Positions 6,961 to 37,959 are shown, counted from the whole stretch's first letter. The stretch is 63,771 nt of DNA, filler included, from Octopus bimaculoides (GCF_001194135.2; 7 parts of 6 records of this genome joined end to end with filler, not necessarily neighbours in it), one strand, 5' to 3'. Notes: generated from the letters alone by a model not told the origin. Translations and numbers: made by a program.

Positions 6961-7937
6961 CAGAAACTTGAAAGCGTACTAACAAATAGAAAAGAAAAAA
7001 AGGACAAAAACGCTACAAACAATGAAGTTGGACCATAAACGCTGTTGCTTAAAATGTCAATTTCTACAAGAAAAGTATAATTTCTGTAAGAAACGAGACA
7101 CCCAAATAACTTGGTAACTCGCGTATTAACCCTATTGTTCGTACGTACTACCTGTACTTATCTAGGATTTACGTGACATTTAAGCAAATCGTAAAATTTT
7201 GGTCAGGAAATAACTAAAATAGACAGAGTTACAACTTACATGGAAAGAAGAAGCTAGAGGTAAATTTCTCTTTAGTTAGAAAGCTAGCCTATGCCAGACA
7301 GACCGACTGCTTGCAAGTGAGAAATAGCTTCCTCTTTAGCTTGGAAACTAACTTTTATCAAATATAGATGCAACCAGTGTTATAAGTTAGATAAACTATC
7401 GAAATTACATTTTATTGATCTTATTTAAGAACATAATGTGTATCTGAACAAAAATTTTGGACGTTATGTATCAATAATTAATGATACGAATGTTTTGTAT
7501 AATAAATGTATTTATTTCTATACTTGTGCACTTAGCAAAGTTTTGGAGATCTTCTCTGGTTTGGCGTAGATCGCTGTTTCTTCTGTGTCATCGCTGCTTT
7601 CTAGGATATGTTGCGCTTTCTTTGTTTACATCATAATGAACACATTCGTAGTCAGTTATAATTAGCTATTAACGACGGAGACAGCCTTTGTAATGAATAT
7701 CAATCAGCACATCCTAGTTGGTAGTGTTGAACGCCGTAGACTGAGGAAAACGTCCGAAGCAATCATCTCGCCATTTAAGCGATGTCCTTTTTCATATGTG
7801 ATGTAGTGGTGTTGCAAAATTTGACTTGTGCGTATTAATTTCCATTATGTCCTTTATATTGTTCAGATTTTCATGCATTTATTTATAAAGTTAAGGAAGT
7901 TACTAAAAATTGAAAGCCATCAGTGGCTTTTGGAGCA

Positions 7938-11745: not shown

Positions 11746-12363
11746 AAAAAATAGTATTAATGATAAACCGTGATCCAGGAGCTTAAATCCTAGGACCAAA
11801 TACGAGGAAACCCGAAAGTTTCAGAATAACAAAAAAATTATTCCCGTGAGTACTGTCCTCACCCAAAGAAAAGTACAGTTGATCTGAGAATACCTGATTC
11901 TCTTAAAACTCTTTCGTATTTAAAATAATACAAATTCACAGATCCATCGTTCTCACAATCTGGTTTTCTTTCCTTACAGCATATCATCGCCAACCATGAA
12001 TAACACCCACTTTTAAATGCACAGCTTAACTATTACATGGGGTTTATGAGTGAGACATGGAACACCTTATATAAAACAAAGCAACGACAACAAATGATAA
12101 TTACAATAAAAAAATAGAAATTTCAATGAAAGATATCCATCACACATTTCTGTAGCGACATTCAACAAAAAGGTGTTTCATGCATTTGTATTTAAAACAA
12201 AAAATACATAGTTTTAAACTTCAAATCGCATATTACCAATGATATGGGGACTATAAAAGAAGGACTGCATAAAAACAGCTATAAAAATGTTGATATATGT
12301 GTGTGTATGTGTGTGTGTGTGTGCATGTATATATACATGCATATATATATGCATATATATACA

Positions 12364-12411
<48 letters not shown>

Positions 12412-12835
12412 NNNNNNNNNNNNNNNNNNNNNNNNNNNNNNNNNNNNNNNNNNNNNNNNNNNNNNNNNNNNNNNNNNNNNNNNNNNNNNNNNNNNNNNNN
12501 NNNNNNNNNNNNNNNNNNNNNNNNNNNNNNNNNNNNNNNNNNNNNNNNNNNNNNNNNNNNNNNNNNNNNNNNNNNNNNNNNNNNNNNNNNNNNNNNNNNN
12601 NNNNNNNNNNNNNNNNNNNNNNNNNNNNNNNNNNNNNNNNNNNNNNNNNNNNNNNNNNNNNNNNNNNNNNNNNNNNNNNNNNNNNNNNNNNNNNNNNNNN
12701 NNNNNNNNNNNNNNNNNNNNNNNNNNNNNNNNNNNNNNNNNNNNNNNNNNNNNNNNNNNNNNNNNNNNNNNNNNNNNNNNNNNNNNNNNNNNNNNNNNNN
12801 NNNNNNNNNNNNNNNNNNNNNNNNNNNNNNNNNNN

Positions 12836-12867
<32 letters not shown>

Positions 12868-12884
12868 TGTATATCTATCTGTGC

Positions 12885-12946
<62 letters not shown>

Positions 12947-13669
12947 AACCGATCTCATCTTCGATATTTGTAACGTGGAGTTTATACGATGTTTATCTGA
13001 AATTGATACAGAAAACAATCAAATTAAATTATATTAGAGTCACACAATAATATTTCTTTGAATAACAACGACGCTGGTATAGAAGCATTGAGTAGTCTTG
13101 GGGAAACTAATGATCATATCTATGTAAAGAATAACAAGACTCTTGGGAATTATGCTGATTAAATAAACAATCATTATTTACGTAGACATGAAGACTACTC
13201 CACGTAGCCGAGGACATCAATAGGTCAGATATCCACATTTTTCCCATCGCTGGTATACGTGAAGTGAAATGGCTAATTCGAAATTTTAAACAGTCGCGTG
13301 CACTCGCATCTTCCCGACTATCATTTACGAACTCTATGGCAGACGTCATTATATATTCAAACAACAATTTCTCACGGAAATTTTTCCCTTTATATTTATT
13401 ATTTATTCAAATAATGAGCATGGAAGAAAAAAAAATTTCAACAAGAAATCATTAGGGACCCTCGAAATAACAGTGGAAAATATTCTGAAGATATGTAAAT
13501 GCCATATCAATTAACTTACATAGAATAGAATGTAACCTATATAGGCAATCATTATTAAAATCTATGCGGACACCCTCTCCACTGCTGCGTAAAATATTCG
13601 TGAGTAAAATGCATTCAGTCTCTCAATGACAACACTGGATAGAACTGTGTCAATTTTTCTAGCTTTACT

Positions 13670-13830
13670 CTTTTACTCTTTTACTTGTTTCAGTCATTTG
13701 ACTGCGGCCATGCTGGAGCACCGCCTTTAGTCGACAAACCGACTCCAGGACTTATTCTGTCGGTCATTTTTGCTGAACCGCTAGATTACGAGGACGTAAA
13801 CACATCACCATCGGTTGTCAAACACAGACA
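13670..13830 (+). repeat. SINE-type repeat (CAGTCATTTGACTGCGGCCATGCTG family)
   Basis: Same motif at 47810-47960, 49650-49840 and, inverted, 60060-60095; it ends in a (CA)n tail. Confidence 0.75.
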
Positions 13831-13984: not shown

Positions 13985-14148
13985 ACGACGGGCTTCTTTC
14001 AGTTTCCGGCAACCGAATCTACTCACAAGGTTTTGGTCGGCCAGAGGCTATAGTAGAAGACACTTGCACAAGGTGCCTCGCAGTGGGAATGAACCCGGAA
14101 CGATGTGGTTGGCAAGCAAGCTACTTACCACAGCCACTCCTGCGCCTA
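13985..14148 (-). repeat. Intact-headed tRNA-derived SINE (host family of the 5S-LINE insertion)
   Basis: Minus strand TAGGCGCAGGAGTGGCTGTGGTAAGTAGCTTGCTTGCCAACCAC..GGGTTCATTCCC..CACCTTGTGCAAGTGTC. Further copies at 49885-49980 (-) and about 55140-55220 (+). Confidence 0.8.
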
Positions 14149-26865: not shown

Positions 26866-27424
26866 AAACTACATATCATAATGAACTAAAAAAATTGAAT
26901 GATAGAAAAAACACACAAAAAAAATCTGAGAAGGCAGCATATAGAAAATGTTGAAAGTAAAAAGCAGAAAATGATAAACAAAACAAAAACAAAAAACTAA
27001 AATGTAAAAAATAAAAAGGTAAAAGAGCTATCCTCGTTAGACCTTAAATGATAAGGCTGGAAAGATATCAACAAATCAATCAGGAATAGGTAAAATTTTC
27101 CAATTCTTCAAAATATATTTATACATATGCTTGCAACCATTGAAAAGTGAATTTTAAAAATCGCTACGTCAATCACATAGCATCCCTCTGACATGAGGAC
27201 AAAGGTAAAGCTACTAAGTTAGCTAGCTATGTATGGAATTTAAAAGACAATGAAACACCACATCTGATTAAGAGGAAAGTAATTGGAAAATTCATACCCT
27301 ATGTTAATGGACCGAATAAATGTAGGCTTTATTTAGCAGAAAGAGCACAGTTCCTGTTCAGATGTAAGATCCATAACTCTCTACTGAACACTAGGTCAGA
27401 AATTTTCAGAGGTTTCAAATATAT

Positions 27425-28897
27425 CATCATCATCATCATCATCATCGTTTAATGTCTGCCTTCCATGCTGATATGGGTGGGATGGTTTGACAGGAGCTGG
27501 CCAGGCAGAAGCCTGCACCAGACTTCTGTGACTGTTTTGGCAGGATTTTTACAGCTGGATGCCCTTCCTAACACCAACCACTCAGAAGAGTAGACTGGGT
27601 GCTTTTAAGTGGCACCTGCACTGACAGGGTCAGCAAGTACTTGCAAGACAAAAAAAACTTTCAAGAGGGGAGTGGGGTATAGGAGGAGGTTATTTTGAGT
27701 CAGGTGATGAAGGGTCATAGCGAGACAGAGAGACAGAAACAGATATCTTGCTGTAGAGAAAGTACAAGGTTACCTGGCTGGAGAGAGAGATCAGAAATGA
27801 AGACAGAAACATGTGCACTACCGCAAAGGAAATACATGGTTACCCAACCTGATGGAAGTGCAGGAGAAGGAGAGAGAGTGGGAGACAGCAGGATAGAGAT
27901 GGTAGAAAAATGCCAGGCATATTCACAAGGGACTGGGATCAGAATATAAACGAGATGGTTGAGTAAAAGAAGAAAGAGATACAGACGGTGGCAAGAGCCA
28001 GAGCATACCCTTGAGGTTCAAACATCATAATATAAGTGGCAGGATATTATGAAGGAAGTATGATTAAAGAGTGCGGAGAGTGGAGAGTGAGTGGTGAAAA
28101 CCTGGATATATATAGAGTTGGTGGTGGGGCTACCAGTTAGCAATGATACAGATGAACAGGGCCATGAGGACAGGATTTGGAGTGAGAGTTAGGTATAGTG
28201 CTTGAAGGAGGAAATGTGAGGAAGAGAAGAGATGTGGAAATGTAGATTGTTTTGTTGGGGTAGGGTGAGTGAAAAGTTTTCTTATCACATCTGGGTGGAA
28301 CACACAGGTCGAGGGCTAGCAGATAGCAATAATACAGTGAGATAGGGCATGTGGGTGGAACACACAGGTGTTCCACCCACATGCTAATAGAGAGCACTGA
28401 TACAATGGTACAGGGCCAAGAGGACAGGATGGGGGAGTGGGAGGTAAGTATAATGCATGAAGCAGAAATGTGAGAAAGAGAAGAGATATAGTTTGGTTTG
28501 TTGTGGTAGAGTGTGTGAGAAGTTTTCTTGTTAAGTGTGGGTGGGACACACAGTGCTTCTAGAACTCAGTTTCACTGATGTGAGCAGGTCTTCTCTAGAA
28601 CTTCATATTGCCAGACATCTCGGTCCATTGTCATTTCCTCCGCAACACCCAATATCCTGAGATTGGTCCTTACCACGTCATCCCACATCTTCCTGGGTCT
28701 TCCTTTTCTGCAGGTACCATTCAGTTTCAGTGATTGGCACTTCTTTATGCAGCTGTCCTCATTTATACACATCACATGTTTGAACCAACGTAGCCTTTTC
28801 TTTTGCATGCTACATTTGAGTCCTCTTATGCCTAACTTTTCCCTCAATACATTTGCACTTTGTCTAATATGTGCACTGATGTTGCACATCCAATGGA
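27425..28897 (-). mobile_element. 5'-truncated RTE-clade LINE with long 3' UTR and (ATG)n tail
   Basis: ORF end MLHWMCNISAH..REKLGIR..RLRWFKHV..GRPRKMWDDVV (28572-28901), then a GA-rich 3' UTR, then the TTAAAC-(GAT)n tail at 27425-27455. Confidence 0.8.
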
Positions 28898-29168
28898 GCA
28901 TATGTATAAATATATTTTGAAGAATTGGAAAATTCCGCCTTTTCCTGACTGACTTGGCAATATTTTTCCAGTCTTATACTTTAAGGTCTAAGGAGAGTAA
29001 CTCTTATACCATTTTACTTTTTACTTTTAACATTTTAGTTTTTGTGTTTTTGTTTTCCATTTTTCATTTTCCATTTTTTACTTTCTGCATTTTCTATATG
29101 CCACCTTCTCAGCATTTTTCGTGTTTCTTCTATTATTCAATCTTTTAGTTCGTTACGATATGTGATTT

Positions 29169-29222
29169 GTGCCTGAAGAATATGTGTGAGTATTTCTCAG
29201 CATATGAAACTATTAGTAGCAC
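29169..29222 (+). ncRNA. Type I hammerhead ribozyme with intact core in the Penelope terminal repeat
   Basis: GTGC-CTGAAGA-ATATGTGTGAGTATTTCTCAGCATAT-GAAA-CTATTAG-TA-GCAC. Stem I is GTGC/GCAC, stem II is closed by ATATG/CATAT, stem III is minimal (AC-U/A-GU around AUU), and the triplet is GUA. Confidence 0.8.
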
Positions 29223-30143
29223 TTAAAGACATGTATTGTGCCCTTTAAATAAATAGTATTTATCTCCCACCAGATGGAGTGCTTTTTTTGTTCAATTTTC
29301 TGTCACAGAACAGTACATTATATATGTATATATATATATCTATACACACACACACATGTATATATAAACATACACATGCATGCATACATATACATACTTA
29401 TACATATACACATAGATACACACATACCTTTATGCACACATGCATATACATATATACAATCACACACACATACATATGTTCATACATATAGTTGCATATA
29501 ACTATTTTGACAACAGAAAGTGAAAACATATGTATAAAAATATACAAAAAAAATAAAGAAACAATAAGACAGTTTTAATGTGGGGAAGGAGGAACTACAG
29601 ATAAGTATGTATAGTATTTTAGCAAAAAACAAGGAACAAAAAATTATAATAAAACCATGATGGCATTTATTCATCTATATGAGTACACAGACACACATGC
29701 AAACATTTTATTGTACATAACTGCAACATTTAAATAGTCACGCGTGTGCGTGCGTGTGTGTGTGTGTATGCACACACCAAAATAATACTCCAAGTTTATA
29801 ATTATTGTTGTTTTCATAAGCAAACATAATTTTAAATATAAGATGAAGTAAATTGTATCTAGTAAGTGAATATGTAAGTTACAATATGTGTTTAATTATA
29901 AATTACTAAGATGTATAAGCAATTACAGATAAAAAAGTAATGATTATATAGATGTATCTTATATATTATACACACACATTTATACATACAAAAATATATA
30001 CACCACATATGCATTCATTTTATAGTATTATATATGTGCAATCACAATGATAGACAAAGGTATATTTTGTAATTGTATGCATGAATGAGCATACAGAAGG
30101 TTTTATTGTGGGTATCCATATAAACATACAGTGTGGTATACAG

Positions 30144-30256
<113 letters not shown>

Positions 30257-30269
30257 CACACATACATCT

Positions 30270-30786
30270 ATTTGGTGTCATCTTCTACAGCTTCCTGAGA
30301 CCTGGTAAGTCAATTACAGTAGATGTATACATCAACCAACTGGATGAAATGATGAGTGAACTTGCAATTAAACAACCGAGATTGGTCAATAGAGACAGGC
30401 CAATTTTCTTGCAAGACAGTGCTCGACCACATGTTGCACAAAGAACACTACTCAAGTTACAGGAACTGAACTTGGAAGTACTCTGTCATCCACTATATTC
30501 ACCAGACCTTGCACCAACTGACTATCACGTTTTCTAGGCATTAGACAACTTTTTGCTAGGAAAAACTTCAAATCTGAAGAAGATGCAAAACAGCCTTTTG
30601 TGATTCCATCACCTCTTGCTCTCCAGAATTCTTTGCTGCTGGCATAAATAAGCTACCAATAAAATGGGGCAAAATTGTGTTGATAATTTAGGTGCATACT
30701 TTGATTAACTGCATTGCTTTTTGTTGAGATGAAGTAAAATAAACTTTCAGTTCAAACTCAGACATTTCATTCTTAATGATCTGATA
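30270..30786 (+). mobile_element. Mariner transposase 3' fragment
   Basis: [48 protein letters not shown] followed by an ITR-like end CATTTCATTCTTAATGATCTGATA. Confidence 0.85.
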
Positions 30787-31273
30787 ACTGATCCTCCTGT
30801 ATTTTATTTTACCCAAAGCCAGGAACTTTTCAGAATGCCCTCATAAGCATTGGATAATTGATTCCTCGTGCTTGTTAATACAGTTTCTACAGTTCTATAC
30901 TTTCTAATGAACACAAATTACTGATCAAAACAGTGTGTATGTTATATTTTTATCTTTTAACTCCCAAATGAGAATTGCAAAGGATGTATTGTTAGATTTA
31001 CTTTTATATTTGAAAGAAAAAATGTAGTTATAAAACTTTAATTCATAGATGTGGCACCCATATATTGGTGTGTTTTTTTGATGAGCTCAGACAGAGCATT
31101 TATAAATTATGTTTTCCAGAAGATATTTATCATTTAAAGGACATGATGTTTTTATTCAATAATTACATAATTTAATTGAATTTTATTTTATAACATGACA
31201 TTTTGTTGAAATTATTGTTACATGATCCGTTGTCAATATGATTATTATGGCAGTTATTATTTTCATTATCATA

Positions 31274-31309
<36 letters not shown>

Positions 31310-31429
31310 TGTAGTAGTAGTAGTAGTTGTTGTTGTTGTTGTTGTTGTATTGATATTCTTACAATTATTGTTATTATTACCAGGATAATAATAGCTATCA
31401 ATGTTATTAGTTTTTGTTTTTTTTTATAA

Positions 31430-32190
31430 TTTAAGGAAGATATATTATCACCTACGCTAGGCAGTGTGGTGTTTTTCTAATAGTAGAAAGAATAGAAAAA
31501 GTATTTTAGTGGATATATGACTACTAAACAAAACATTATACCATATGATTTTTCTGTTAAGTGATTCATTATAAATTTATTGCTGTGGTTATTATTATGT
31601 GAGTTATCAACTTGATCATCATTATTTTGTGTATTTTTCAATTAATAAATTTTACAATATTTTGTGTTAATGGAATCATTTTTTAAATTTATTAAGTGTT
31701 TTATAATTTGTAGTGCCTAATTGTTGTTTATCATTTGTATCATTTCTATTTTATCTTTATATCCAACTCTAGAAAGAACTGAATTACAGTAGTTAGTATG
31801 GTAGGAAAAAATATCTTTATTATCTGAAATTTTAGAAATACAATGTGAAATGCCATTTATAATTGAATTTATAACTTCACGCAGATGATTTGATTTTTTT
31901 GTGTATGTATTGAAGATTTTCATTAATTTTGTGATAAGTTTTATATAAACCAGAGTTTGAATAAAAAGTGACATCTAAAAAAGCAGCTGTTCTATGATTC
32001 AAACCCACAATAATTGAAGTATTTGATTATTCTTTTCTTCATTTTTTTGTCAAATTCAATTTCTACATTACTATATCTATAAAGTAAAAAAAGAGAATCA
32101 TCCCTACACAGACAACCTTGAATAGAATGGAATTGCTCTTTAATATTATCTAATAAATACAATCCCACAAGATCTGCCTTCATTATTACT
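31430..32190 (-). mobile_element. Decayed Penelope reverse transcriptase fragment
   Basis: ADLVGLYLL..CLCRDD (ELVG..GLYRDD-like), KSNHL..SHCISKISDNKDIF..VGY and RKIIWYNVLFS (RKIIWFNPPFS-like). Confidence 0.75.
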
Positions 32191-33506
32191 ACAACCCCAC
32201 TCAGTTGAGGGAATTTTTTCTGTCTTGCAGGTTACTTGATGATCTCATAAGGCTGGTGCTACAAAAAAAAGCACCTGGGGCACTCTGTGAAGTTGCTGGC
32301 ATTAGGAAGAGCATCCAGCCATAGAAACCAGGCCAAAACTAACTATGGAACTTGATGCAGTCCCCTGATTTGTTGAATCCTGTTCAAAACATAGAAGCAA
32401 GATGATGATGATGGTTTTTGGTAACTAGATCTATTACTGAAAGTTTATAACTATTAAATAATGTATATGTTTACTCTTTAATCATTAAATCTAGAACATC
32501 CAGAAATGTAATTTTCTGCCATTTATTACATCCTAATCAAGTACATAATTCATTTAAAACATAAAATCCAACTTCATAATGTTTATTGCCAAGTCTATAA
32601 TAATAATAGAAATGTGTTTGCAGTAGGTATTATCATTAGAAATGAATGAAGTGAATTTTCAAAAACGTTTTGCTCTCTTATTTTACCTTTAAATATTCAC
32701 ATTCATCCCCAAGAATATTGAAATTTTTGTGTTCACAACCAAGATAAGGATCTCTTATTACTATATGAATTTAATATCTATAACATCTCTTACATTCAGT
32801 GAAGATTCAAGCCAAAGTTTCCTACACTATCTATAAGTAAAAGTTTTGCAATCTACAAATACCTGTACTCAGTGGTGAGTTGCCAAAATTTTAACCAATG
32901 CTTCGGGATAAAATATTACAAATATGACAATAAAATATAGCCAATCCTTCAGAAAGATTGGCAACATTGGATACCAAATTAATTACTAAGTACATTCATT
33001 TTGTCATTGAACATTTTGTTTACTGAATACATTTACATCTTTTAACTATAAACAAATATACTGGAAGTGTTAATTATTTTATGTCTGTCTCACAGTGAAG
33101 ATCATATTTGAAATTAAATTGGAAAATAATCTATACATAGAATAAATGAATATTAAAACAAAATATTTTAGATTATAAAAAGAAATAAAGTTGGTATTTT
33201 TCATTTAAGAACAGCAAATCAATGATATAGACAATTACTACTACTACAACTCAGCAACATTCAGAAGGAAATGAAATTGCAGATGTAACTTTTGTAAGAA
33301 AGTAATATGAAAATAAAGAACTGATATCATGAAATATTCATTTATCTTATTTCAGTTACTTTTTCCTTTTATTTCTGCATGATCAATTCATCTTTTGGAG
33401 CAATTGAAACTGGTAAAAATGCATATACTTTCGTTTTTATTTATCCATGATAAAGTTCTCAAAGCAATTTCTTCTTTCTGTTTATTAATATGCTTTTACT
33501 CACATT

Positions 33507-33525
33507 ATAGGTGCAGGCATGGCTG
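33507..33525 (+). repeat. 5' stub of a tRNA-derived SINE interrupted by the 5S-LINE insertion
   Basis: ATAGGTGCAGGCATGGCTG matches the head of the family whose copies read (minus strand) TAGGCGCAGGAGTGGCTGTGGTAAG ending near 14148 and ATAGGCGTAGGAGTGGCTGTGTGGTAAG ending near 49980. Confidence 0.7.
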
Positions 33526-33638
33526 GCCATATCACGCTGAGAGCACCGGTTCTCATCTGATCACCGAAGTTAAGCAAAGTCGAGCCTAGTGAGTAATTAG
33601 ATGGGTGACCGCTTGGGAAACCTAGGTGCTGTAAGCAT
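33525..33638 (+). rRNA. 5S rRNA: 5S rRNA-derived copy lacking about the first 6 nt and the oligo-T terminator (probable retro-pseudogene)
   Basis: GGCCATATCACGCTGAGAGCACCGGTTCTCATCTGATCACCGAAGTTAAGCAAAGTCGAGCCTAGTGAGTAATTAGATGGGTGACCGCTTGGGAAACCTAGGTGCTGTAAGCAT follows the animal 5S pattern over 114 nt. A-box AGTTAAGC is intact at 33568-33575; the C-box region is altered (AGTAATTAGATGGG versus the usual AGTACTTGGATGGG). Confidence 0.93.
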
Positions 33639-36600
33639 CCCACAATTTAAATTTCTCATGACGTCAAAGACATTAGTAGTGTTAGGAGACTATAACGGTA
33701 TAGTTGATGCACGCATCGATAGTGTTGGCTCGATCCATAGGAAAGTAAACTCACGCCTCGTAGATCTGCTTAAGTGTTTTCAGCTGGCAGATCATTACAG
33801 ACTTGACCATCCGAACGTCCCTGAGTGGACCTGGATGAGAAGCAACGGAAGGTTCAGGTCTTACTTAGATAGAATAGTAATAAGAACTAGAGATAAGTCT
33901 AGTTTTAGCTGTCCACAGCTCGTCCATGTAGCTTACACTGACCATAGAATGGTCAAGTGTACACTGGATGTAGATAGTACGGTTAAGAGAGGAACCAGCT
34001 ACTGGAAGCTGAATAAGTCTATTTTGACTTGCGAGGCATGCCATAGCCGGATTAAGGGGTTAGTACAGAGGGCGTTAACCGGCACTGTGGTTAACAACCG
34101 ATGGTGGTTCGCCCTCAAGAGAGCCATTCGTTTTGAGTCTATTAGGTTTAGCCGTCAGCTAAGACTAGATAAGGCCAGAATAGAAGGGTAACTAGTTAAG
34201 GACCTAGAGGAGGCGTTGAGGTTGGGCTCCGCATCTCACATTTTGGCAGCGAGAATGGCCTTGGACCGTCACCTCAAAGCCAAACATGAAGGGTACAGAG
34301 TTCGGGCTAAAGTATGCGCATTGGGCCGTGCGGGAATTAACGTTGCCAGATGGGCCCGTACGGTAGAAACCCAGCGTGGCAATGATGCCACAATTAGGTC
34401 TCTTGTCGATGATAATGGGTGTTCGGTCGATGGACGGGACGAGATGTGTGAGGCGCTTCACAAGCACTTTGCCGAGTTATTCGGGAGTGGCGGGGCGCTG
34501 GATCATGGCAAGGCCCTTAGAGATTTCCTGTCTGGTGGCCCACGTCTCTCGGCACGAGAAGCTGAGTGCTGTGAGGGGCCAATCACGGCCGAGGAGGTGA
34601 TCAAGGTACTGGGTGAATGCCCCGGGGAGAAGTCGCCTGGTCTCGATGGTCTGCCTTACGAATTCTACAAAAGTATGCCAGACTTGTTCGGGCACCTGCT
34701 GGCCAGCGTCTACGCCAATTGGCATCNNNNNNNNNNNNNNNNNNNNNNNNNNNNNNNNNNNNNNNNNNNNNNNNNNNNNNNNNNNNNNNNNNNNNNNNNN
34801 NNNNNNNNNNNNNNNNNNNNNNNNNNNNNNNNNNNNNNNNNNNNNNNNNNNNNNNNNNNNNNNNNNNNNNNNNNNNNNNNNNNNNNNNNNNNNNNNNNNN
34901 NNNNNNNNNNNNNNNNNNNNNNNNNNNNNNNNNNNNNNNNNNNNNNNNNNNNNNNNNNNCAAACGTGCGCTATCCTGGGCAGGACGATCCACAACAATCT
35001 CCACCTTATACACTACTCCTTAGAGAGAGTGGAAAAACTTTCTGGCGCAGGGGGGGGGGGCACTGGTACATTTAGACCAGTCTAAGGCTTTCGATAGGGT
35101 CGACCATCGGTACTCAGCGGCGGTCCTTGGGAAGGCTGGCCTGGGCCCAACCTTCCGCGGTTGGATTGCTACGTTGTACAGCGACATCGAGTCTGTCGTA
35201 AAAGTGAACAGTTTCCTTTCGAAGCCATTCGGGATCGAGCACTCAGTGCGTCAGGGGTGTCCCCTGTCTCCGCTTTTGTATGTGTTGGCCCTCGAGCCAT
35301 TGCTGCGGAAGTTGGAGGCGATAGGGGATGCACCGCATGATCTATGGTGTGGGAAAGGAGCTACGGCGTATGCGGATGATATCACCATCAGCGTGACGGA
35401 TGAGGGCCAGTTTCCAATGGTGGAAGAGGCTATCAAAAGTTACGAGACGGTAGCAGGAGCAAAAGTTAACAAGGACAAGTCAATCGGTTTGCAATTCGGC
35501 ACCTGGAAGGGCAAGCCAATGCCGTCCAATAACGTCATGGGGCGTTGGACGGAAGGTCCTGTTAAGCTGCTTGGAGTCTGGTTCAGGCCAGGCCTCCAGA
35601 TAGAGAAAAATTGGAGCGAGGTGACCAGCAGGGTGACTGCTCTAACCCAGACCTGGTCTGGGCGGGCGTTATCCTTGCTAGGAAAGGCGGAGGTGGTGCA
35701 GATGTTTATAGCATCGGTTATCACCTACCGATTTGTGGCTGAACAAGTTGGAAAGAATCCTTTTCCACTTTTTGTGGAAGGGAGGAAAGCCACTCGTGAA
35801 GTGCTCTGTCTGCTGCCAGAAACCGCTAAAGGGTGAGCTAGGGAAGCCTTGGCTGAGGATGCGAAAATTCGCATTAAGGTTGAGGCACCTTTGGCTTTAC
35901 CTGGATGGAGAGCAGGCGTGGTCACCGCATGTCCAGTTCTACCTTCCGCACTTAACGTCCTTAATGGACGTTGGTAACTGGATCAAGCAGAGATCTAGGC
36001 TGGGGAACTGGCAATTGGAATGCCGACAGGCACTTCAGCTACTCTCTCGGGCAGGCAATGCCGGCAACAGGAGTTCCACCGTGGATTTTTATAGCAGGTT
36101 AGTGGGATTTAGGTCCGAAGACACCTTGGGGAAGACCCTGGGCTATGAAGAAAATCAGTTGACCAACCTGTTCAGAACTTTCGGGCCGGGATATCTGGAC
36201 AATTACCAGAAATCCCTGGCTTGGCAGTGCTTCCATGTGGTGTTACCTGTTCGTGATAAACTGTCAAGACACGAAAGTGCCGTATTGCCGACATGTCCGA
36301 GGTGCGGGCAGGACAGGGAAACCGTCTTGCACGCATTCGTGGAATGTCCAGAATTAACGAGACTGATAGTTTTCGCAGAACAACTGTTGTCATCGATGAG
36401 AAGAGTACAGCTTTCAGCTGAATCTATCATCGAGATCGTGCCACCTCCTTCCCTCAACAGGGAAAGGAAGACTTGCTTTTCCTGCGTAGTAGCCATACTG
36501 AAAGAAACAGTATGGAAGATGCCTGTAAGAAGCATAGTGACGGATACCTTTGTATCTGGCCAGGGGTTAGTTAACTTTTTTGTTACCACCTCAGTAGTAA

Positions 36601-36644
36601 GATCAGGCTGGAGAAGAGGTATCTGTCACGAGACAGATTCATGA
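33601..36644 (+). pseudogene. Disrupted ORF2 (APE endonuclease - reverse transcriptase - CCHC) of the Tx1/L1-like element
   Basis: APE motifs GDYN, SYLDRI and YTDHR (33601-34191). RT motifs KSPGLDGLPYEFY, RTIHNNLHLI, LDQSKAFDRVDH (about 35070-35106, off-track frame), VRQGCPLSPLLYVLALEPL and AYADDI. C-terminal CPRCGQDRETVLHAFVEC. In-frame stops near 34189 and 34204, frameshifts near 35050 and 35730, and an N gap at 34727-34959. Confidence 0.88.
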
Positions 36645-36897
36645 GAAGATGGAAGCCTGTGGCAAGGAAGCTGGGAATGTTTGGCACCAGGTAAGTGGGA
36701 GCCAAAAACAAGGGAAAGAAAAAGCAAAATTGCATCTGTATTGAGCAATACTTCAATCGAACATTGTAAATAATTTTTATTGTTTATTTAAAATTGTAAA
36801 TATTTAATCAATACAGTTTCTTCACCCCTTTTATGTTTGTCTGTCCTTGTTCGTCCCCTCTTTGTAATGCCTTTATGGCAAATATTTATGAAATAAA
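33639..36897 (+). mobile_element. 5'-truncated L1-group (Tx1-like) non-LTR retrotransposon
   Basis: Successive ORF pieces encode the C-terminal APE endonuclease, an RT and a CCHC knuckle. The 3' UTR ends at AATAAA (36892-36897). Tx1 versus other L1-group clades is inferred from motif style. Confidence 0.88.
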
Positions 36898-37030
36898 GAA
36901 GCTTGCTTCCCAACCACATGGTTCCAGGTTCAGTCCCATTGCATGGTACCTTGGGAAAGTGTCCTCTGACAAAGCTGACCAAATCCTTGTGAGTGAATTT
37001 GGTAGATGAAAACTGAAAGAAGCCTATCAT
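36896..37030 (+). repeat. 3' remainder of the same interrupted tRNA-derived SINE
   Basis: AAGAAGCTTGCTTCCCAACCACATGGTTCCAGGTTCAGTCCC (B-box-like GGTTCAGTCC)...GTGAATTTGGTAGATGAAAACTGAAAGAAGCC continues where the 33507 stub stops, by comparison with the 13985-14148 copy. Confidence 0.85.
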
Positions 37031-37445
37031 ATATGTATGTATATATACATATATATTCATATATGTATATAATTAAGTGGAGAATGGAAAAACAAACACA
37101 AGAAGAAGCAAGTCAATTGGGCTAGTTAGCCATTGATTTAATTATGTGGAGATTATATAATGAGTCATTTATGATCATTTCGATGTGCCAAATGGTTTGC
37201 AAGACAAAAAAAATTTTTGAGTGTGGAGGAAGCATTGGAGATCCAAATTGAGGGAGTGAAAGTAAAGTCCAGACTACATGTGTTTTCTAGCCAGCAGATC
37301 CTCTGATGTAAAAATTACTCAATGAGGGATACTCAGCTAGTGTCTCATCAAGCCAAAGATACCTTAATTATATGAAGGTTACATTGTCATTAAGGATTCC
37401 CAAGTTAACTCACCAAAGATAAAATTTGAAATATATATATAATAT

Positions 37446-37477
<32 letters not shown>

Positions 37478-37959
37478 ATCAGTGGTGACTCCAGCACTCG
37501 GACTGTTTGGGCTTAGCCTGAGTATAAATTTAGTAAAGTGAACATGTATTTGCAAGATGATTTAATTTCTGCCAACACTGACTTCAAGTATGTAATTTCA
37601 GTCAATAAGTTGGGCTAATTTTATTGAGCCTGGTTGCAGTCTATTTATTTTCATTCAACATCTGGTGGTCATCTTAGAGGTGCCCTGTGTCAAAAAATAT
37701 CATTCACAGCAGACGTTCTTTCGATATTGTTCACACGTGCCAGACTCGGGCTCAGAAGTTACTGCCTGAGTTGTTATCTATAATCATAAAAATTTAAAGT
37801 AATTCAAATTCAATTTTTTTTTGAAACAATAAATTTCTATAGTGATTAGGATTTAAGTTCCAATCTATGAAAAGTTTCCATTCTACAATATTCTTAAAGG
37901 AACGAAAAATTATCCAACACAACAATTCCTATCTCTCCACTTGTAGTCATCATCTGCAT

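What the first reader, a model, noticed from the sequence alone, without database searches (positions are those of the whole stretch)
33507..37030. 5S rRNA fused to a Tx1/L1-like LINE, inserted as one unit into the A-box region of a tRNA-derived SINE
Seen: SINE head (33507-33525), 5S nt 7-120 (33525-33638, 1-nt G overlap), a LINE truncated inside its APE domain, 3' UTR AATAAA, then the SINE resumes at AAGAAGCTTGC (36896). By comparison with intact copies (13985-14148, 49885-49980), about 6 nt of target (TGTGGT) are missing and no TSD or poly(A) is visible. The 5S lacks its oligo-T terminator. Known: L1 makes U6-L1 type template-switch chimeras in vertebrates, some Tx1 families target small-RNA genes (Mutsu in 5S, Keno in U2), and SINE3 uses 5S heads. 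Inference: this is either a 5S-LINE template-switch chimera or a member of a propagating 5S-headed LINE derivative. I do not know of either being described in cephalopods.
Basis: partly seen in the sequence, partly recalled or inferred. Interest (0 to 1): 0.8.

Follow-up and report, generated by a model that had tools for sequence, protein, structure and literature searches.

The report
5S rRNA–LINE chimeric retrocopy in a SINE
A dead, front-truncated octopus LINE retrotransposon carries an almost complete 5S ribosomal RNA copy on its front end and sits inside an older SINE; this looks like a one-off template-switch chimera of a kind well known from mammalian L1, and is probably ordinary apart from its host.

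Summary
Window 33525-33637 is a real 5S rRNA sequence (Rfam 83.7 bits, threshold 38). It lacks its first ~6 nt and has no T4 terminator.

After a 12-nt filler comes an L1/Tx1-type LINE (33649-36896). It starts at about residue 132 of ORF2, inside the endonuclease domain, and runs to the family's true 3' end (...GAAATAA). An Argonauta relative has the same 3' end.

The assembly gap (34727-34959) hides about 176-190 nt. Both sides are colinear with an 85%-identical O. bimaculoides copy and with related proteins.

The unit splits a tRNA-type octopus SINE. The stub GGTGCAGGCATGGCTG lies on the left and AAGAAGCTTGC... on the right. About 6 nt (TGTGGT) are lost, and there is no target-site duplication and no poly(A).

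Best reading (about 0.7): a single target-primed reverse transcription event. The LINE's enzyme left its own RNA partway and jumped onto a 5S rRNA.

A propagating 5S-headed family is unlikely. The LINE body holds 14 runs of T4 or more, the first only 140 nt after the 5S, so Pol III transcription would stop early. No second fusion turned up, but octopus repeats are almost absent from the searchable libraries, so genomic copy number remains untested.

This is a new member of a known kind, of modest interest.

The parts
33510..33525 (+). 5' stub of a tRNA-type octopus SINE (GGTGCAGGCATGGCTG). It ends in the A-box region. The G at 33525 is shared with the 5S.
   Evidence: It matches 14 of 16 positions of the head consensus from three SINE copies in L001, and both mismatches are CpG transitions.
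33525..33636 (+). 5S rRNA-derived segment, about nt 7 to 118, sense to the LINE. It lacks the first ~6 nt and the terminal U-run, and has 14 differences from an invertebrate 5S consensus.
   Evidence: Rfam RF00001 scores 83.7 bits. Alignment to 10 metagenome 5S genes is.
33637..33648 (+). 12-nt filler (ATCCCACAATTT) between the 5S and the LINE. Its origin is unresolved: a patch from the LINE, a 5S 3' trailer, or untemplated.
   Evidence: It matches neither the 5S consensus nor the LINE at this position. With the preceding GC it matches the LINE-internal GCATCCCACATTTT (L001 10930-10943) at 13 of 14; 1 of 300 shuffles reaches this.
33649..34726 (+). LINE, left of the gap: C-terminal third of the AP-endonuclease domain, the linker, and the N-terminal part of the RT. 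There is one in-frame stop at 34189-34191.
   Evidence: It is 85.4% identical to L001 10352-11423. Pfam Exo_endo_phos matches weakly. tblastn with P0001, P0002 and L124 ORF2 residues 133-491 matches here.
34727..34959 (.). Assembly gap of 233 N. It hides roughly 176-190 nt of the RT (about 62 residues). The flanks are colinear.
   Evidence: L001 has 176 nt between the two aligned blocks. P0001 and P0002 lack 62-63 residues across the gap.
34960..36644 (+). LINE, right of the gap: RT core (YADD at about 35375), then a C-terminal region with a CCHC zf-RVT motif (about 36195-36341). There are frameshifts at the G10 run (about 35050) and near 35740.
   Evidence: Pfam RVT_1 2.6e-17 and zf-RVT 5e-7. 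It is 83% identical to L001 11600-12051. Human L1 ORF2p is the best solved relative at E 7e-31. The frames are shown.
36645..36896 (+). LINE 3' UTR, ending ...TCGTCCCCTCTTTGTAATGCCTTTATGGCAAATATTTATGAAATAA. This is the family's true 3' terminus, with no poly(A). The last 1-2 A overlap the SINE's AAGAAGC.
   Evidence: The last ~60 nt align with the 3' end of the Argonauta hians relative (L124 about 7140-7192), which also ends GAAATAA.
36896..37030 (+). Remainder of the split SINE (AAGAAGCTTGCTTCCCAACC...GAAAGAAGCCTATCA), followed by its (TATG/TATA)-like tail up to about 37075. All CpGs are lost.
   Evidence: It is 77-78% identical to SINE copies in L001. CpG observed/expected is 0.0 here against 0.7-0.8 in the insert.

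Best explanation
This is a single retrotransposition event that produced a chimeric retrocopy.

Step 1 (inferred). An L1/Tx1-group octopus LINE nicked the bottom strand of an older tRNA-type SINE in its A-box region, at about 5'-CTTCTT/ACCACA-3'. It primed reverse transcription on the 3' end of its own RNA (...GAAAUAA), using 1-2 A/T of microhomology.

Step 2 (inferred). It copied about 3.2 kb. Inside the endonuclease-coding region the enzyme left the LINE RNA. It possibly copied a 12-nt patch first, then continued on a 5S rRNA, entering near the RNA's 3' end (...GUAAGC). It copied this down to about nt 7.

Step 3 (inferred). The cDNA end was joined to the upstream target DNA at a shared G. 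About 6 bp of target (TGTGGT) were lost and no target-site duplication was made.

The product was dead on arrival as a LINE, since it has no ORF1 and no front of ORF2. It has since gained one stop and at least two frameshifts. The 5S part is a pseudogene with no function of its own.

Shown directly: the order, orientation and boundaries of the four parts, the 5' truncation, the intact 3' end, the colinearity across the gap, and the target deletion.
For: - 5S identity and limits.
- The LINE is truncated at ORF2 residue ~132, whereas the 85%-identical copy L001 and the homologues P0002-P0004 continue upstream through a full endonuclease domain.
- The LINE 3' end is complete. The last ~60 nt, including the terminal GAAATAA, are shared with the Argonauta relative L124. 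An intact 3' end with a truncated 5' end is the signature of target-primed reverse transcription (established knowledge).
- The SINE halves fit together with only ~6 nt missing and nothing else intervening.
- The insert is younger than its target. CpG observed/expected is 0.7-0.8 in the 5S and LINE, against 0.0 in the SINE and 0.2 in the flanks.
- The 3' tail of this LINE lineage is conserved between Octopus and Argonauta, and in Argonauta a tRNA-like SINE copies it. This argues that the enzyme recognises its own tail. A lone 5S RNA would then be a poor template in trans, and riding on a LINE cDNA would be the easy route in (inference).
- Small RNA fused in sense to a 5'-truncated LINE 3' part is the known architecture of U6/L1 chimeras, and 5S/L1 chimeras are also catalogued (though those are often antisense): bioRxiv 10.1101/2025.02.02.635956 and PMC4494074.
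Against: - Only this one locus could be examined. Neither the orthologous empty site nor the genomic copy number was accessible.
- There is no TSD, so the single-event character rests on parsimony rather than on flanking duplications.
- A 12-nt filler separates the 5S from the LINE, whereas classic U6/L1 junctions are usually direct.
- The assembly gap lies inside the LINE, so physical continuity of the two halves is inferred. The grounds are colinearity, similar divergence from L001 (85% and 83%), and the matching SINE halves.
- Human 5S/L1 chimeras are mostly antisense and truncated, unlike this sense, near-full-length 5S.
Confidence: 0.7

Rival explanations
1. Two nested, independent insertions. 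Either a 5S retropseudogene entered the SINE first and the LINE later landed exactly at its 3' end, or the truncated LINE entered first and a 5S retrocopy later landed exactly at the SINE/LINE boundary.
For: There is no TSD to tie the two parts together. A 12-nt filler lies between them and could be a remnant of a separate event. Old repeat-rich regions such as this one collect nested insertions: an RTE-like LINE, a mariner-like fragment and another LINE lie in the same piece.
Against: It needs the second insertion to hit the precise boundary, so that no SINE sequence lies between the 5S and the LINE and no LINE or SINE sequence is duplicated. The filler does not match the SINE in the sense orientation. 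A lone 5S RNA lacks the conserved 3' tail that this LINE lineage appears to require. CpG retention is similar in the 5S (0.71) and the LINE (0.70-0.82), which fits one age.
Confidence: 0.12
2. A copy of a propagating 5S-headed non-autonomous family: 5S promoter plus LINE body and tail, mobilised by the LINE. The junction would then be shared by many loci.
For: The 5S keeps the region of its internal promoter (nt ~50-97 present), and the unit ends with the LINE's authentic recognition tail. 5S-headed SINEs (SINE3) and SINE birth from LINE/small-RNA chimeras are known. This LINE lineage does have a tRNA-headed partner SINE in Argonauta.
Against: There are 14 runs of T4 or more on the sense strand between the 5S and the LINE tail, the first at 33777, only 140 nt downstream. 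A Pol III transcript would therefore not reach the tail. At 3.4 kb the unit is far longer than any SINE. The one other family copy has endonuclease sequence at the junction position. No protein in the 5.8-billion or 1.84-billion libraries aligns to the 5S-derived residues, and none exceeds 78% identity. The exact junction is absent from JGI metagenome contigs. These absences are weak, because octopus repeats are scarcely represented in those collections.
Confidence: 0.06
3. Assembly or scaffolding artefact: the 5S, LINE and SINE pieces are not truly adjacent in the genome.
For: This is a short-read assembly with many N gaps, one of them inside the LINE. LINEs and SINEs are classic sources of mis-joins.
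Against: Both informative junctions (SINE/5S at 33525 and 5S/LINE at 33637-33649) lie in one gap-free contig, 25512-34726. The LINE/SINE junction lies in another, 34960-40840. The junction partners share at most 1-2 nt, so there is no repeat overlap to cause a collapse. The two contigs carry complementary halves of one SINE broken at the same point, and colinear LINE halves at the expected spacing.
Confidence: 0.05
4. A site-specific (Mutsu-like) LINE sitting in a genuine 5S gene or array, with the SINE resemblance coincidental.
For: Some Tx1-clade families target 5S genes.
Against: Mutsu inserts about 20 nt into the 5S and leaves the rest of the 5S downstream of the element. Here nt 7-118 lie upstream, and the 3' flank is SINE for 135 nt at 77-78% identity to other copies. 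Rfam finds only one 5S in the 26.5-kb piece. The 16-nt stub matches the SINE head, at a chance of about 3e-7 by my own calculation.
Confidence: 0.02

Closest known systems
U6/L1 and 5S rRNA/L1 chimeric retrocopies of mammals (Buzdin et al. 2002/2003, cited from memory; catalogue in bioRxiv 10.1101/2025.02.02.635956)
   Same: A small Pol III RNA is fused to the 5' side of a 5'-truncated LINE that keeps its 3' end, inserted as one unit. It is explained by template switching, or RNA ligation, during target-primed reverse transcription. Each event is unique and does not propagate. The sense, near-full-length small RNA here resembles the U6/L1 pattern.
   Different: The host is an octopus. The LINE has no poly(A) tail and appears to recognise a specific 3' end. 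There is a target deletion where most human 5S/L1 cases checked have TSDs (6 of 8). Human 5S/L1 chimeras are mostly antisense and truncated at nt 46 or 90, whereas this 5S is sense and nearly complete. A 12-nt filler sits at the junction.
Multi-part template-jump pseudogenes of Magnaporthe grisea (MINE; PMC2104539, listed, abstract only read)
   Same: A non-mammalian LINE makes chimeric retrocopies with an abundant non-coding RNA. Double jumps are proposed there, which would parallel the possible LINE to patch to 5S sequence here.
   Different: It involves a different LINE clade, partner RNA and host. In Magnaporthe many copies exist, whereas here there is one.
5S-headed SINEs (SINE3 and relatives; Kapitonov & Jurka 2003, cited)
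   Same: A 5S head joined to a LINE-derived 3' tail. Such SINEs are thought to begin as chimeras of exactly this kind.
   Different: SINEs are short (under about 600 bp), lack internal Pol III terminators and are multi-copy. This unit is about 3.4 kb, has 14 T4+ runs and is seen once.
Mutsu, the 5S-gene-specific Tx1-clade LINE of zebrafish (PMC5340908)
   Same: A LINE of the L1/Tx1 group physically next to 5S sequence.
   Different: Mutsu interrupts the 5S about 20 nt from its 5' end, sits in 5S arrays, leaves 5S sequence downstream and has poly(A). Here the 5S is entirely upstream, solitary, and the target is a SINE.

Membership tests
LINE template-switch chimeric retrocopy (U6/L1-type) | Small cellular RNA copy joined, with no target DNA between them, to the 5' side of a 5'-truncated LINE | tested here: met
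   5S nt 7-118 is followed, after 12 nt of filler that is not target sequence, by a LINE starting at ORF2 residue ~132.
LINE template-switch chimeric retrocopy (U6/L1-type) | LINE part retains the authentic 3' terminus (product of target-primed reverse transcription) | tested here: met
   The last ~60 nt and the terminal GAAATAA are shared with the Argonauta relative L124.
LINE template-switch chimeric retrocopy (U6/L1-type) | Whole unit bounded by one pair of target-site duplications, or otherwise shown to be a single insertion | tested here: inconclusive
   There is no TSD. The target SINE is rejoined with ~6 nt lost and nothing extra. This fits one event with a target deletion but does not prove it.
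LINE template-switch chimeric retrocopy (U6/L1-type) | Unique event: the junction is not shared by other loci | not testable with these tools
   No octopus genome could be searched by DNA. Indirect searches found no second fusion.
L1/Tx1 group of non-LTR retrotransposons | AP-endonuclease, then RT, then a C-terminal Cys/His motif in ORF2; closest to L1 ORF2p among characterised RTs | tested here: met
   Pfam finds Exo_endo_phos (weak, 17.1 bits, below its 24.5 cut-off), RVT_1 and zf-RVT in order. Human L1 ORF2p scores E 7e-31 against 1e-11 for R2. The relative L124 has an ORF1 containing a CCHC motif, seen by eye (no Pfam family matched ORF1).
Tx1 clade specifically | Placement within Tx1 in an RT phylogeny with reference elements | not tested
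   No reference set (Repbase) was available. The only hint is a fish homologue named after the Tx1 149-kDa protein (P0020).
Tx1 clade specifically | Sequence-specific target shared by copies (common in the clade, not universal) | tested here: inconclusive
   The window copy is in a SINE A-box region. The Argonauta relative is followed by (TTA)4, and a neighbouring copy by (TTA)17, which may be tail or target. There are too few copies to judge.
Mutsu-type 5S-gene-specific LINE | Insertion at a fixed site inside the 5S gene, with 5S sequence on both sides, within 5S arrays | tested here: not met
   All the 5S sequence is upstream, the 3' flank is SINE, and there is a single 5S in 26.5 kb.
5S-headed SINE (SINE3-like) | Short Pol III-transcribable unit with no internal T4+ terminators before the tail | tested here: not met
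   There are 14 T4+ runs between 33777 and 36832, and the unit is about 3.4 kb.
5S-headed SINE (SINE3-like) | Multiple dispersed copies sharing the head-body junction | not testable with these tools
   See the copy-number row above.
tRNA-derived octopus SINE (target element) | Repeated dispersed element with a tRNA-like head (A and B boxes) | tested here: inconclusive
   It is repeated: 3-4 copies in 13 kb of L001 at 72-78% identity. A-box-like TGGCTGTGTGG and B-box-like GGTTCAGTCCC motifs are seen by eye. ARAGORN and Rfam do not call a tRNA in the copies tested. tRNA-derived octopus SINEs are published (Ohshima & Okada 1994, cited), but the family name was not established.

The most novel reading that the evidence does not exclude
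The reverse transcriptase of this octopod L1/Tx1-type LINE lineage, which recognises its own 3' tail, may habitually jump onto Pol III transcripts: a 5S rRNA here, and three head-to-tail tRNA-like SINE units abutting the 5' end of the Argonauta relative. If so, the window shows a caught-in-the-act intermediate of SINE birth, and a shorter 5S-headed derivative with this LINE's tail may exist in Octopus genomes.
Probability: 0.1. Interest if true: 0.55.

Novelty: new member of a known kind. Interest (0 to 1): 0.3.

Why it matters
If confirmed as a single event, it extends LINE/small-RNA template-switch chimeras from poly(A)-dependent mammalian L1 to a tail-specific L1/Tx1-type LINE in a cephalopod. 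That is consistent with template jumping being a general property of these enzymes, and it gives one concrete example of the raw material from which 5S-headed SINEs arise. It has no evident consequence for the host: the copy is dead, sits in repeat-rich non-coding DNA, and the 5S part is a decayed pseudogene. Its practical value is as an annotation caveat, since an isolated 5S hit here is not a 5S gene, and as a possible rare genomic marker for octopus phylogeny.

Tried and rejected
- Other copies inside the piece. BLAST of the SINE, 5S and LINE parts against 15464-41954 found only themselves.
- Exact-protein look-ups of the junction-spanning ORF (33601-34191) and of the C-terminal ORF found no record.
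- Three homology searches with LINE protein segments and one exhaustive representative search with the junction ORF were run. The best relative is 78% identical (O. bimaculoides P0004), and nothing aligns to the 5S-derived residues. Copy number could therefore not be assessed.
- The exact junction 27-mer had 0 hits in JGI metagenome contigs.
- A 5S core pattern searched in the same collection gave 120 invertebrate 5S loci of unknown species. These were useful for the 5S limits but not for the octopus 5S flank.
- Rfam on L001, L124, L123 and L002 found no 5S next to related LINE copies.
- ARAGORN and Rfam on SINE copies made no tRNA call.
- Pfam on the Argonauta ORF1 matched no family.
- Mutsu-like targeting is rejected because of the 3' junction.
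- A triple template switch that would create the SINE halves de novo is rejected as far less parsimonious than insertion into an existing, much older SINE (CpG 0.0 against 0.7-0.8).
- The origin of the filler was explored three ways, without a decision.
Full report
**Observation**

I read 33300-37200 directly. Rfam finds a single family in the whole piece: 5S rRNA at 33522-33637 on the + strand, at 83.7 bits against a gathering score of 38. I aligned it with ten invertebrate 5S genes pulled from metagenome contigs. True 5S homology begins at GGCCATA (33525, 5S nt 7) and ends at GTAAGC (33636). The three bases that Rfam aligns to model positions 1-3 belong to the SINE.

The copy differs from the consensus of those genes at 14 of 112 positions, five of which are invariant in all ten. 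It also breaks several helix pairs. It lacks a T4 terminator; only a TTT lies at 33646-33648. It is a pseudogene-grade copy, not a gene.

The protein search returned an O. bimaculoides protein, P0004. Its locus L001 comes from GCA_001194135.2, CM046626.1 and holds a copy of the same LINE.
- Window 33649-34724 aligns to L001 10352-11423 at 85.4%.
- Window 34960-35406 aligns to L001 11600-12051 at 83.1%.
- L001 has 176 nt where the window has 233 N.
- Related proteins P0001 and P0002 bridge the gap with 62-63 residues missing.

The two sides are colinear parts of one LINE, at the expected spacing and with similar divergence. As written they are even in the same frame, but the N count is an estimate, so the frame cannot be known. 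Physical adjacency still needs long reads. The strongest internal argument for it is that the two contigs carry complementary halves of one SINE, broken at the same point.

**The LINE**

Pfam gives three domains in order on the + strand: the C-terminal part of an AP-endonuclease (weak, below its cut-off), RVT_1 (2.6e-17) and the zf-RVT Cys/His motif (5e-7). Human L1 ORF2p is by far the best solved relative, at E 7e-31 against about 1e-11 for R2. L1-group membership is therefore supported. Tx1 clade membership was not tested, for lack of reference elements.

The copy starts at about residue 132-133 of ORF2. L001 and the homologues P0002-P0004 continue upstream through a full endonuclease domain, so the window copy is 5'-truncated. 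It has one stop (34189), a frameshift in a G10 run (about 35050) and another near 35740.

A full-length relative in Argonauta hians (L124) has an RT 60% identical at the protein level. Its last ~60 nt of 3' UTR align with the window's, and both finish GAAATAA. The window LINE therefore ends at its family's true terminus (36896) and has no poly(A). An intact 3' end with a truncated 5' end is the signature of target-primed reverse transcription.

**The target**

L001 carries three to four copies of the SINE. Their heads read GGCGCAGGCGTGGCTG-TGTGGT-AAGAAGCTTGC. The window has GGTGCAGGCATGGCTG at 33510-33525. This matches 14 of 16 positions, and both mismatches are CpG transitions. The window resumes at AAGAAGCTTGC at 36896.

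About 6 nt are missing, and there is no duplication. The G at 33525 could belong to either the SINE or the 5S, and the last 1-2 A of the LINE could belong to either the LINE or the SINE.

The SINE has lost every CpG (observed/expected 0.0). The 5S and the LINE keep 0.7-0.8. The insert is therefore clearly younger than its target, which excludes exotic models in which the SINE halves were created by the same event.

**The junction**

The 5S and the LINE are not directly abutted. Twelve nucleotides (33637-33648, ATCCCACAATTT) match neither. Three origins are possible.
- With the preceding GC, they match an internal LINE segment about 585 nt downstream at 13 of 14, on the same strand (L001 GCATCCCACATTTT). 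Only 1 of 300 shuffles reaches this, which suggests an extra short jump within LINE RNA. The comparison was made post hoc.
- They could be the 3' trailer of a 5S primary transcript ending in UUU. One unidentified invertebrate 5S gene ends GGCATCTCTTTTT.
- Their reverse complement contains TGTGG, the deleted target. The chance of that is about 2%.

None of these could be settled without the octopus 5S rDNA unit.

**Mechanism**

The most economical account is one event.
1. The LINE nicks the SINE's bottom strand at about CTTCTT/ACCACA.
2. It primes on the ...GAAAUAA end of the LINE RNA.
3. It copies about 3.2 kb.
4. It switches template to a 5S rRNA near that RNA's 3' end and copies it to about nt 7.
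5. The cDNA is joined to the upstream target at a shared G, with a 6-bp target deletion.

This is the architecture of mammalian U6/L1 and 5S/L1 chimeras. One further argument favours a ride-along over an independent 5S retrocopy. The 3' tail of this LINE lineage is conserved from Octopus to Argonauta, and in Argonauta a tRNA-like SINE has copied that tail (GCCCTTGTGGCTAATA.AGAAAT). This implies the enzyme recognises its own 3' end, which a lone 5S RNA lacks.

**Rivals**

- Two nested insertions would require the second to land exactly on a boundary. This cannot be excluded without TSDs or an orthologous site (0.12).
- A propagating 5S-headed family is disfavoured (0.06). There are 14 T4+ Pol III terminators, the first at 33777. 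The unit is 3.4 kb long. L001 has normal LINE sequence at the junction position. No second fusion was seen. These absences are weak, because the libraries hold almost no octopus repeats.
- An assembly artefact is unlikely, since each junction lies in gap-free sequence and the junction partners share no repeat (0.05).
- A Mutsu-type insertion into a 5S gene is contradicted by the 3' junction.

**Comparison and novelty**

5S/L1 chimeras make up about 10% of the human catalogue, but there they are mostly antisense and truncated and usually have TSDs. This one is sense, nearly full-length, made by a LINE without poly(A), and carries a target deletion and a filler. My literature searches found no cephalopod example, but absence from that library is not proof.

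I rate it a new member of a known kind, with interest 0.3. The most novel reading still open is that this enzyme habitually captures Pol III transcripts and that a shorter 5S-headed derivative exists. That rests on one Octopus locus and one Argonauta concatenate, and I give it about 0.1.

Noticed in passing
L124 800-1400 and 7140-7210 (Argonauta hians BAAFZT010000007.1): Directly upstream of the full-length Argonauta relative lie the 3' end of another copy plus (TTA)17, then three head-to-tail copies of a ~185-nt tRNA-like SINE. The SINE's tail (CGGCCCTTGTGGCTAATAGAGAAATCTATTT) mimics the LINE's tail, which suggests a LINE/SINE partner pair. The LINE itself is followed by (TTA)4. The SINEx3-LINE concatenate could reflect end-to-end template jumping or tail- or microsatellite-targeted insertion.
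   Followed up: partly
window 33637-33648: The 12-nt filler between the 5S and the LINE matches an internal LINE segment at 13 of 14 when the preceding GC is included. It also resembles a 5S 3' trailer, and its reverse complement contains the deleted target TGTGG. Its origin is unresolved.
   Followed up: partly
window 37800-39400 (- strand ORFs 38001-38537 and 38598-38969): A second, unrelated LINE fragment lies on the minus strand (endonuclease motif GDFNGHVG). It coincides with strong GC skew, about -0.6 to -0.75.
   Followed up: no
window 24816-25739 (+): An RTE/CR1-like LINE C-terminal fragment (…FRYLGDQVSSGGGCAESVTARI…) is interrupted by the N gap at 25353-25511.
   Followed up: no
window 30133-30537 (+): A mariner/Tc1-like transposase C-terminal fragment (…LQDSARPHVAQRTLLKLQELNLEVLCHPLYSPDLAPTDYH…) follows an (AT)n run.
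   Followed up: no
window 26006-26277: A 115-bp tandem repeat, 2.4 copies, 87% matches.
   Followed up: no
window 21859-22668 (+): A 269-aa ORF with a low-complexity Ser/Thr/Asn-rich middle and a C-terminal part (…GIGFKQCLYNHRSSFRVLERQYVTSLGSYVWHLKNEETPYDIKCQILEH…). It was not identified and is possibly a transposon remnant.
   Followed up: no
P0033: A protein labelled 'MAG: zinc-binding domain-containing protein [Herbaspirillum sp.]' is 51% identical to the C-terminal region of this cephalopod-type LINE. It is probably eukaryotic contamination in a bacterial metagenome-assembled genome.
   Followed up: no
L001 9331-9372, 15022-15120: Long (TAA)n and (CTT)n(TTA)n microsatellites lie near the O. 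bimaculoides LINE copy. No link to the LINE ends could be shown, because its 3' half lies in an N gap (12052-13771).
   Followed up: partly
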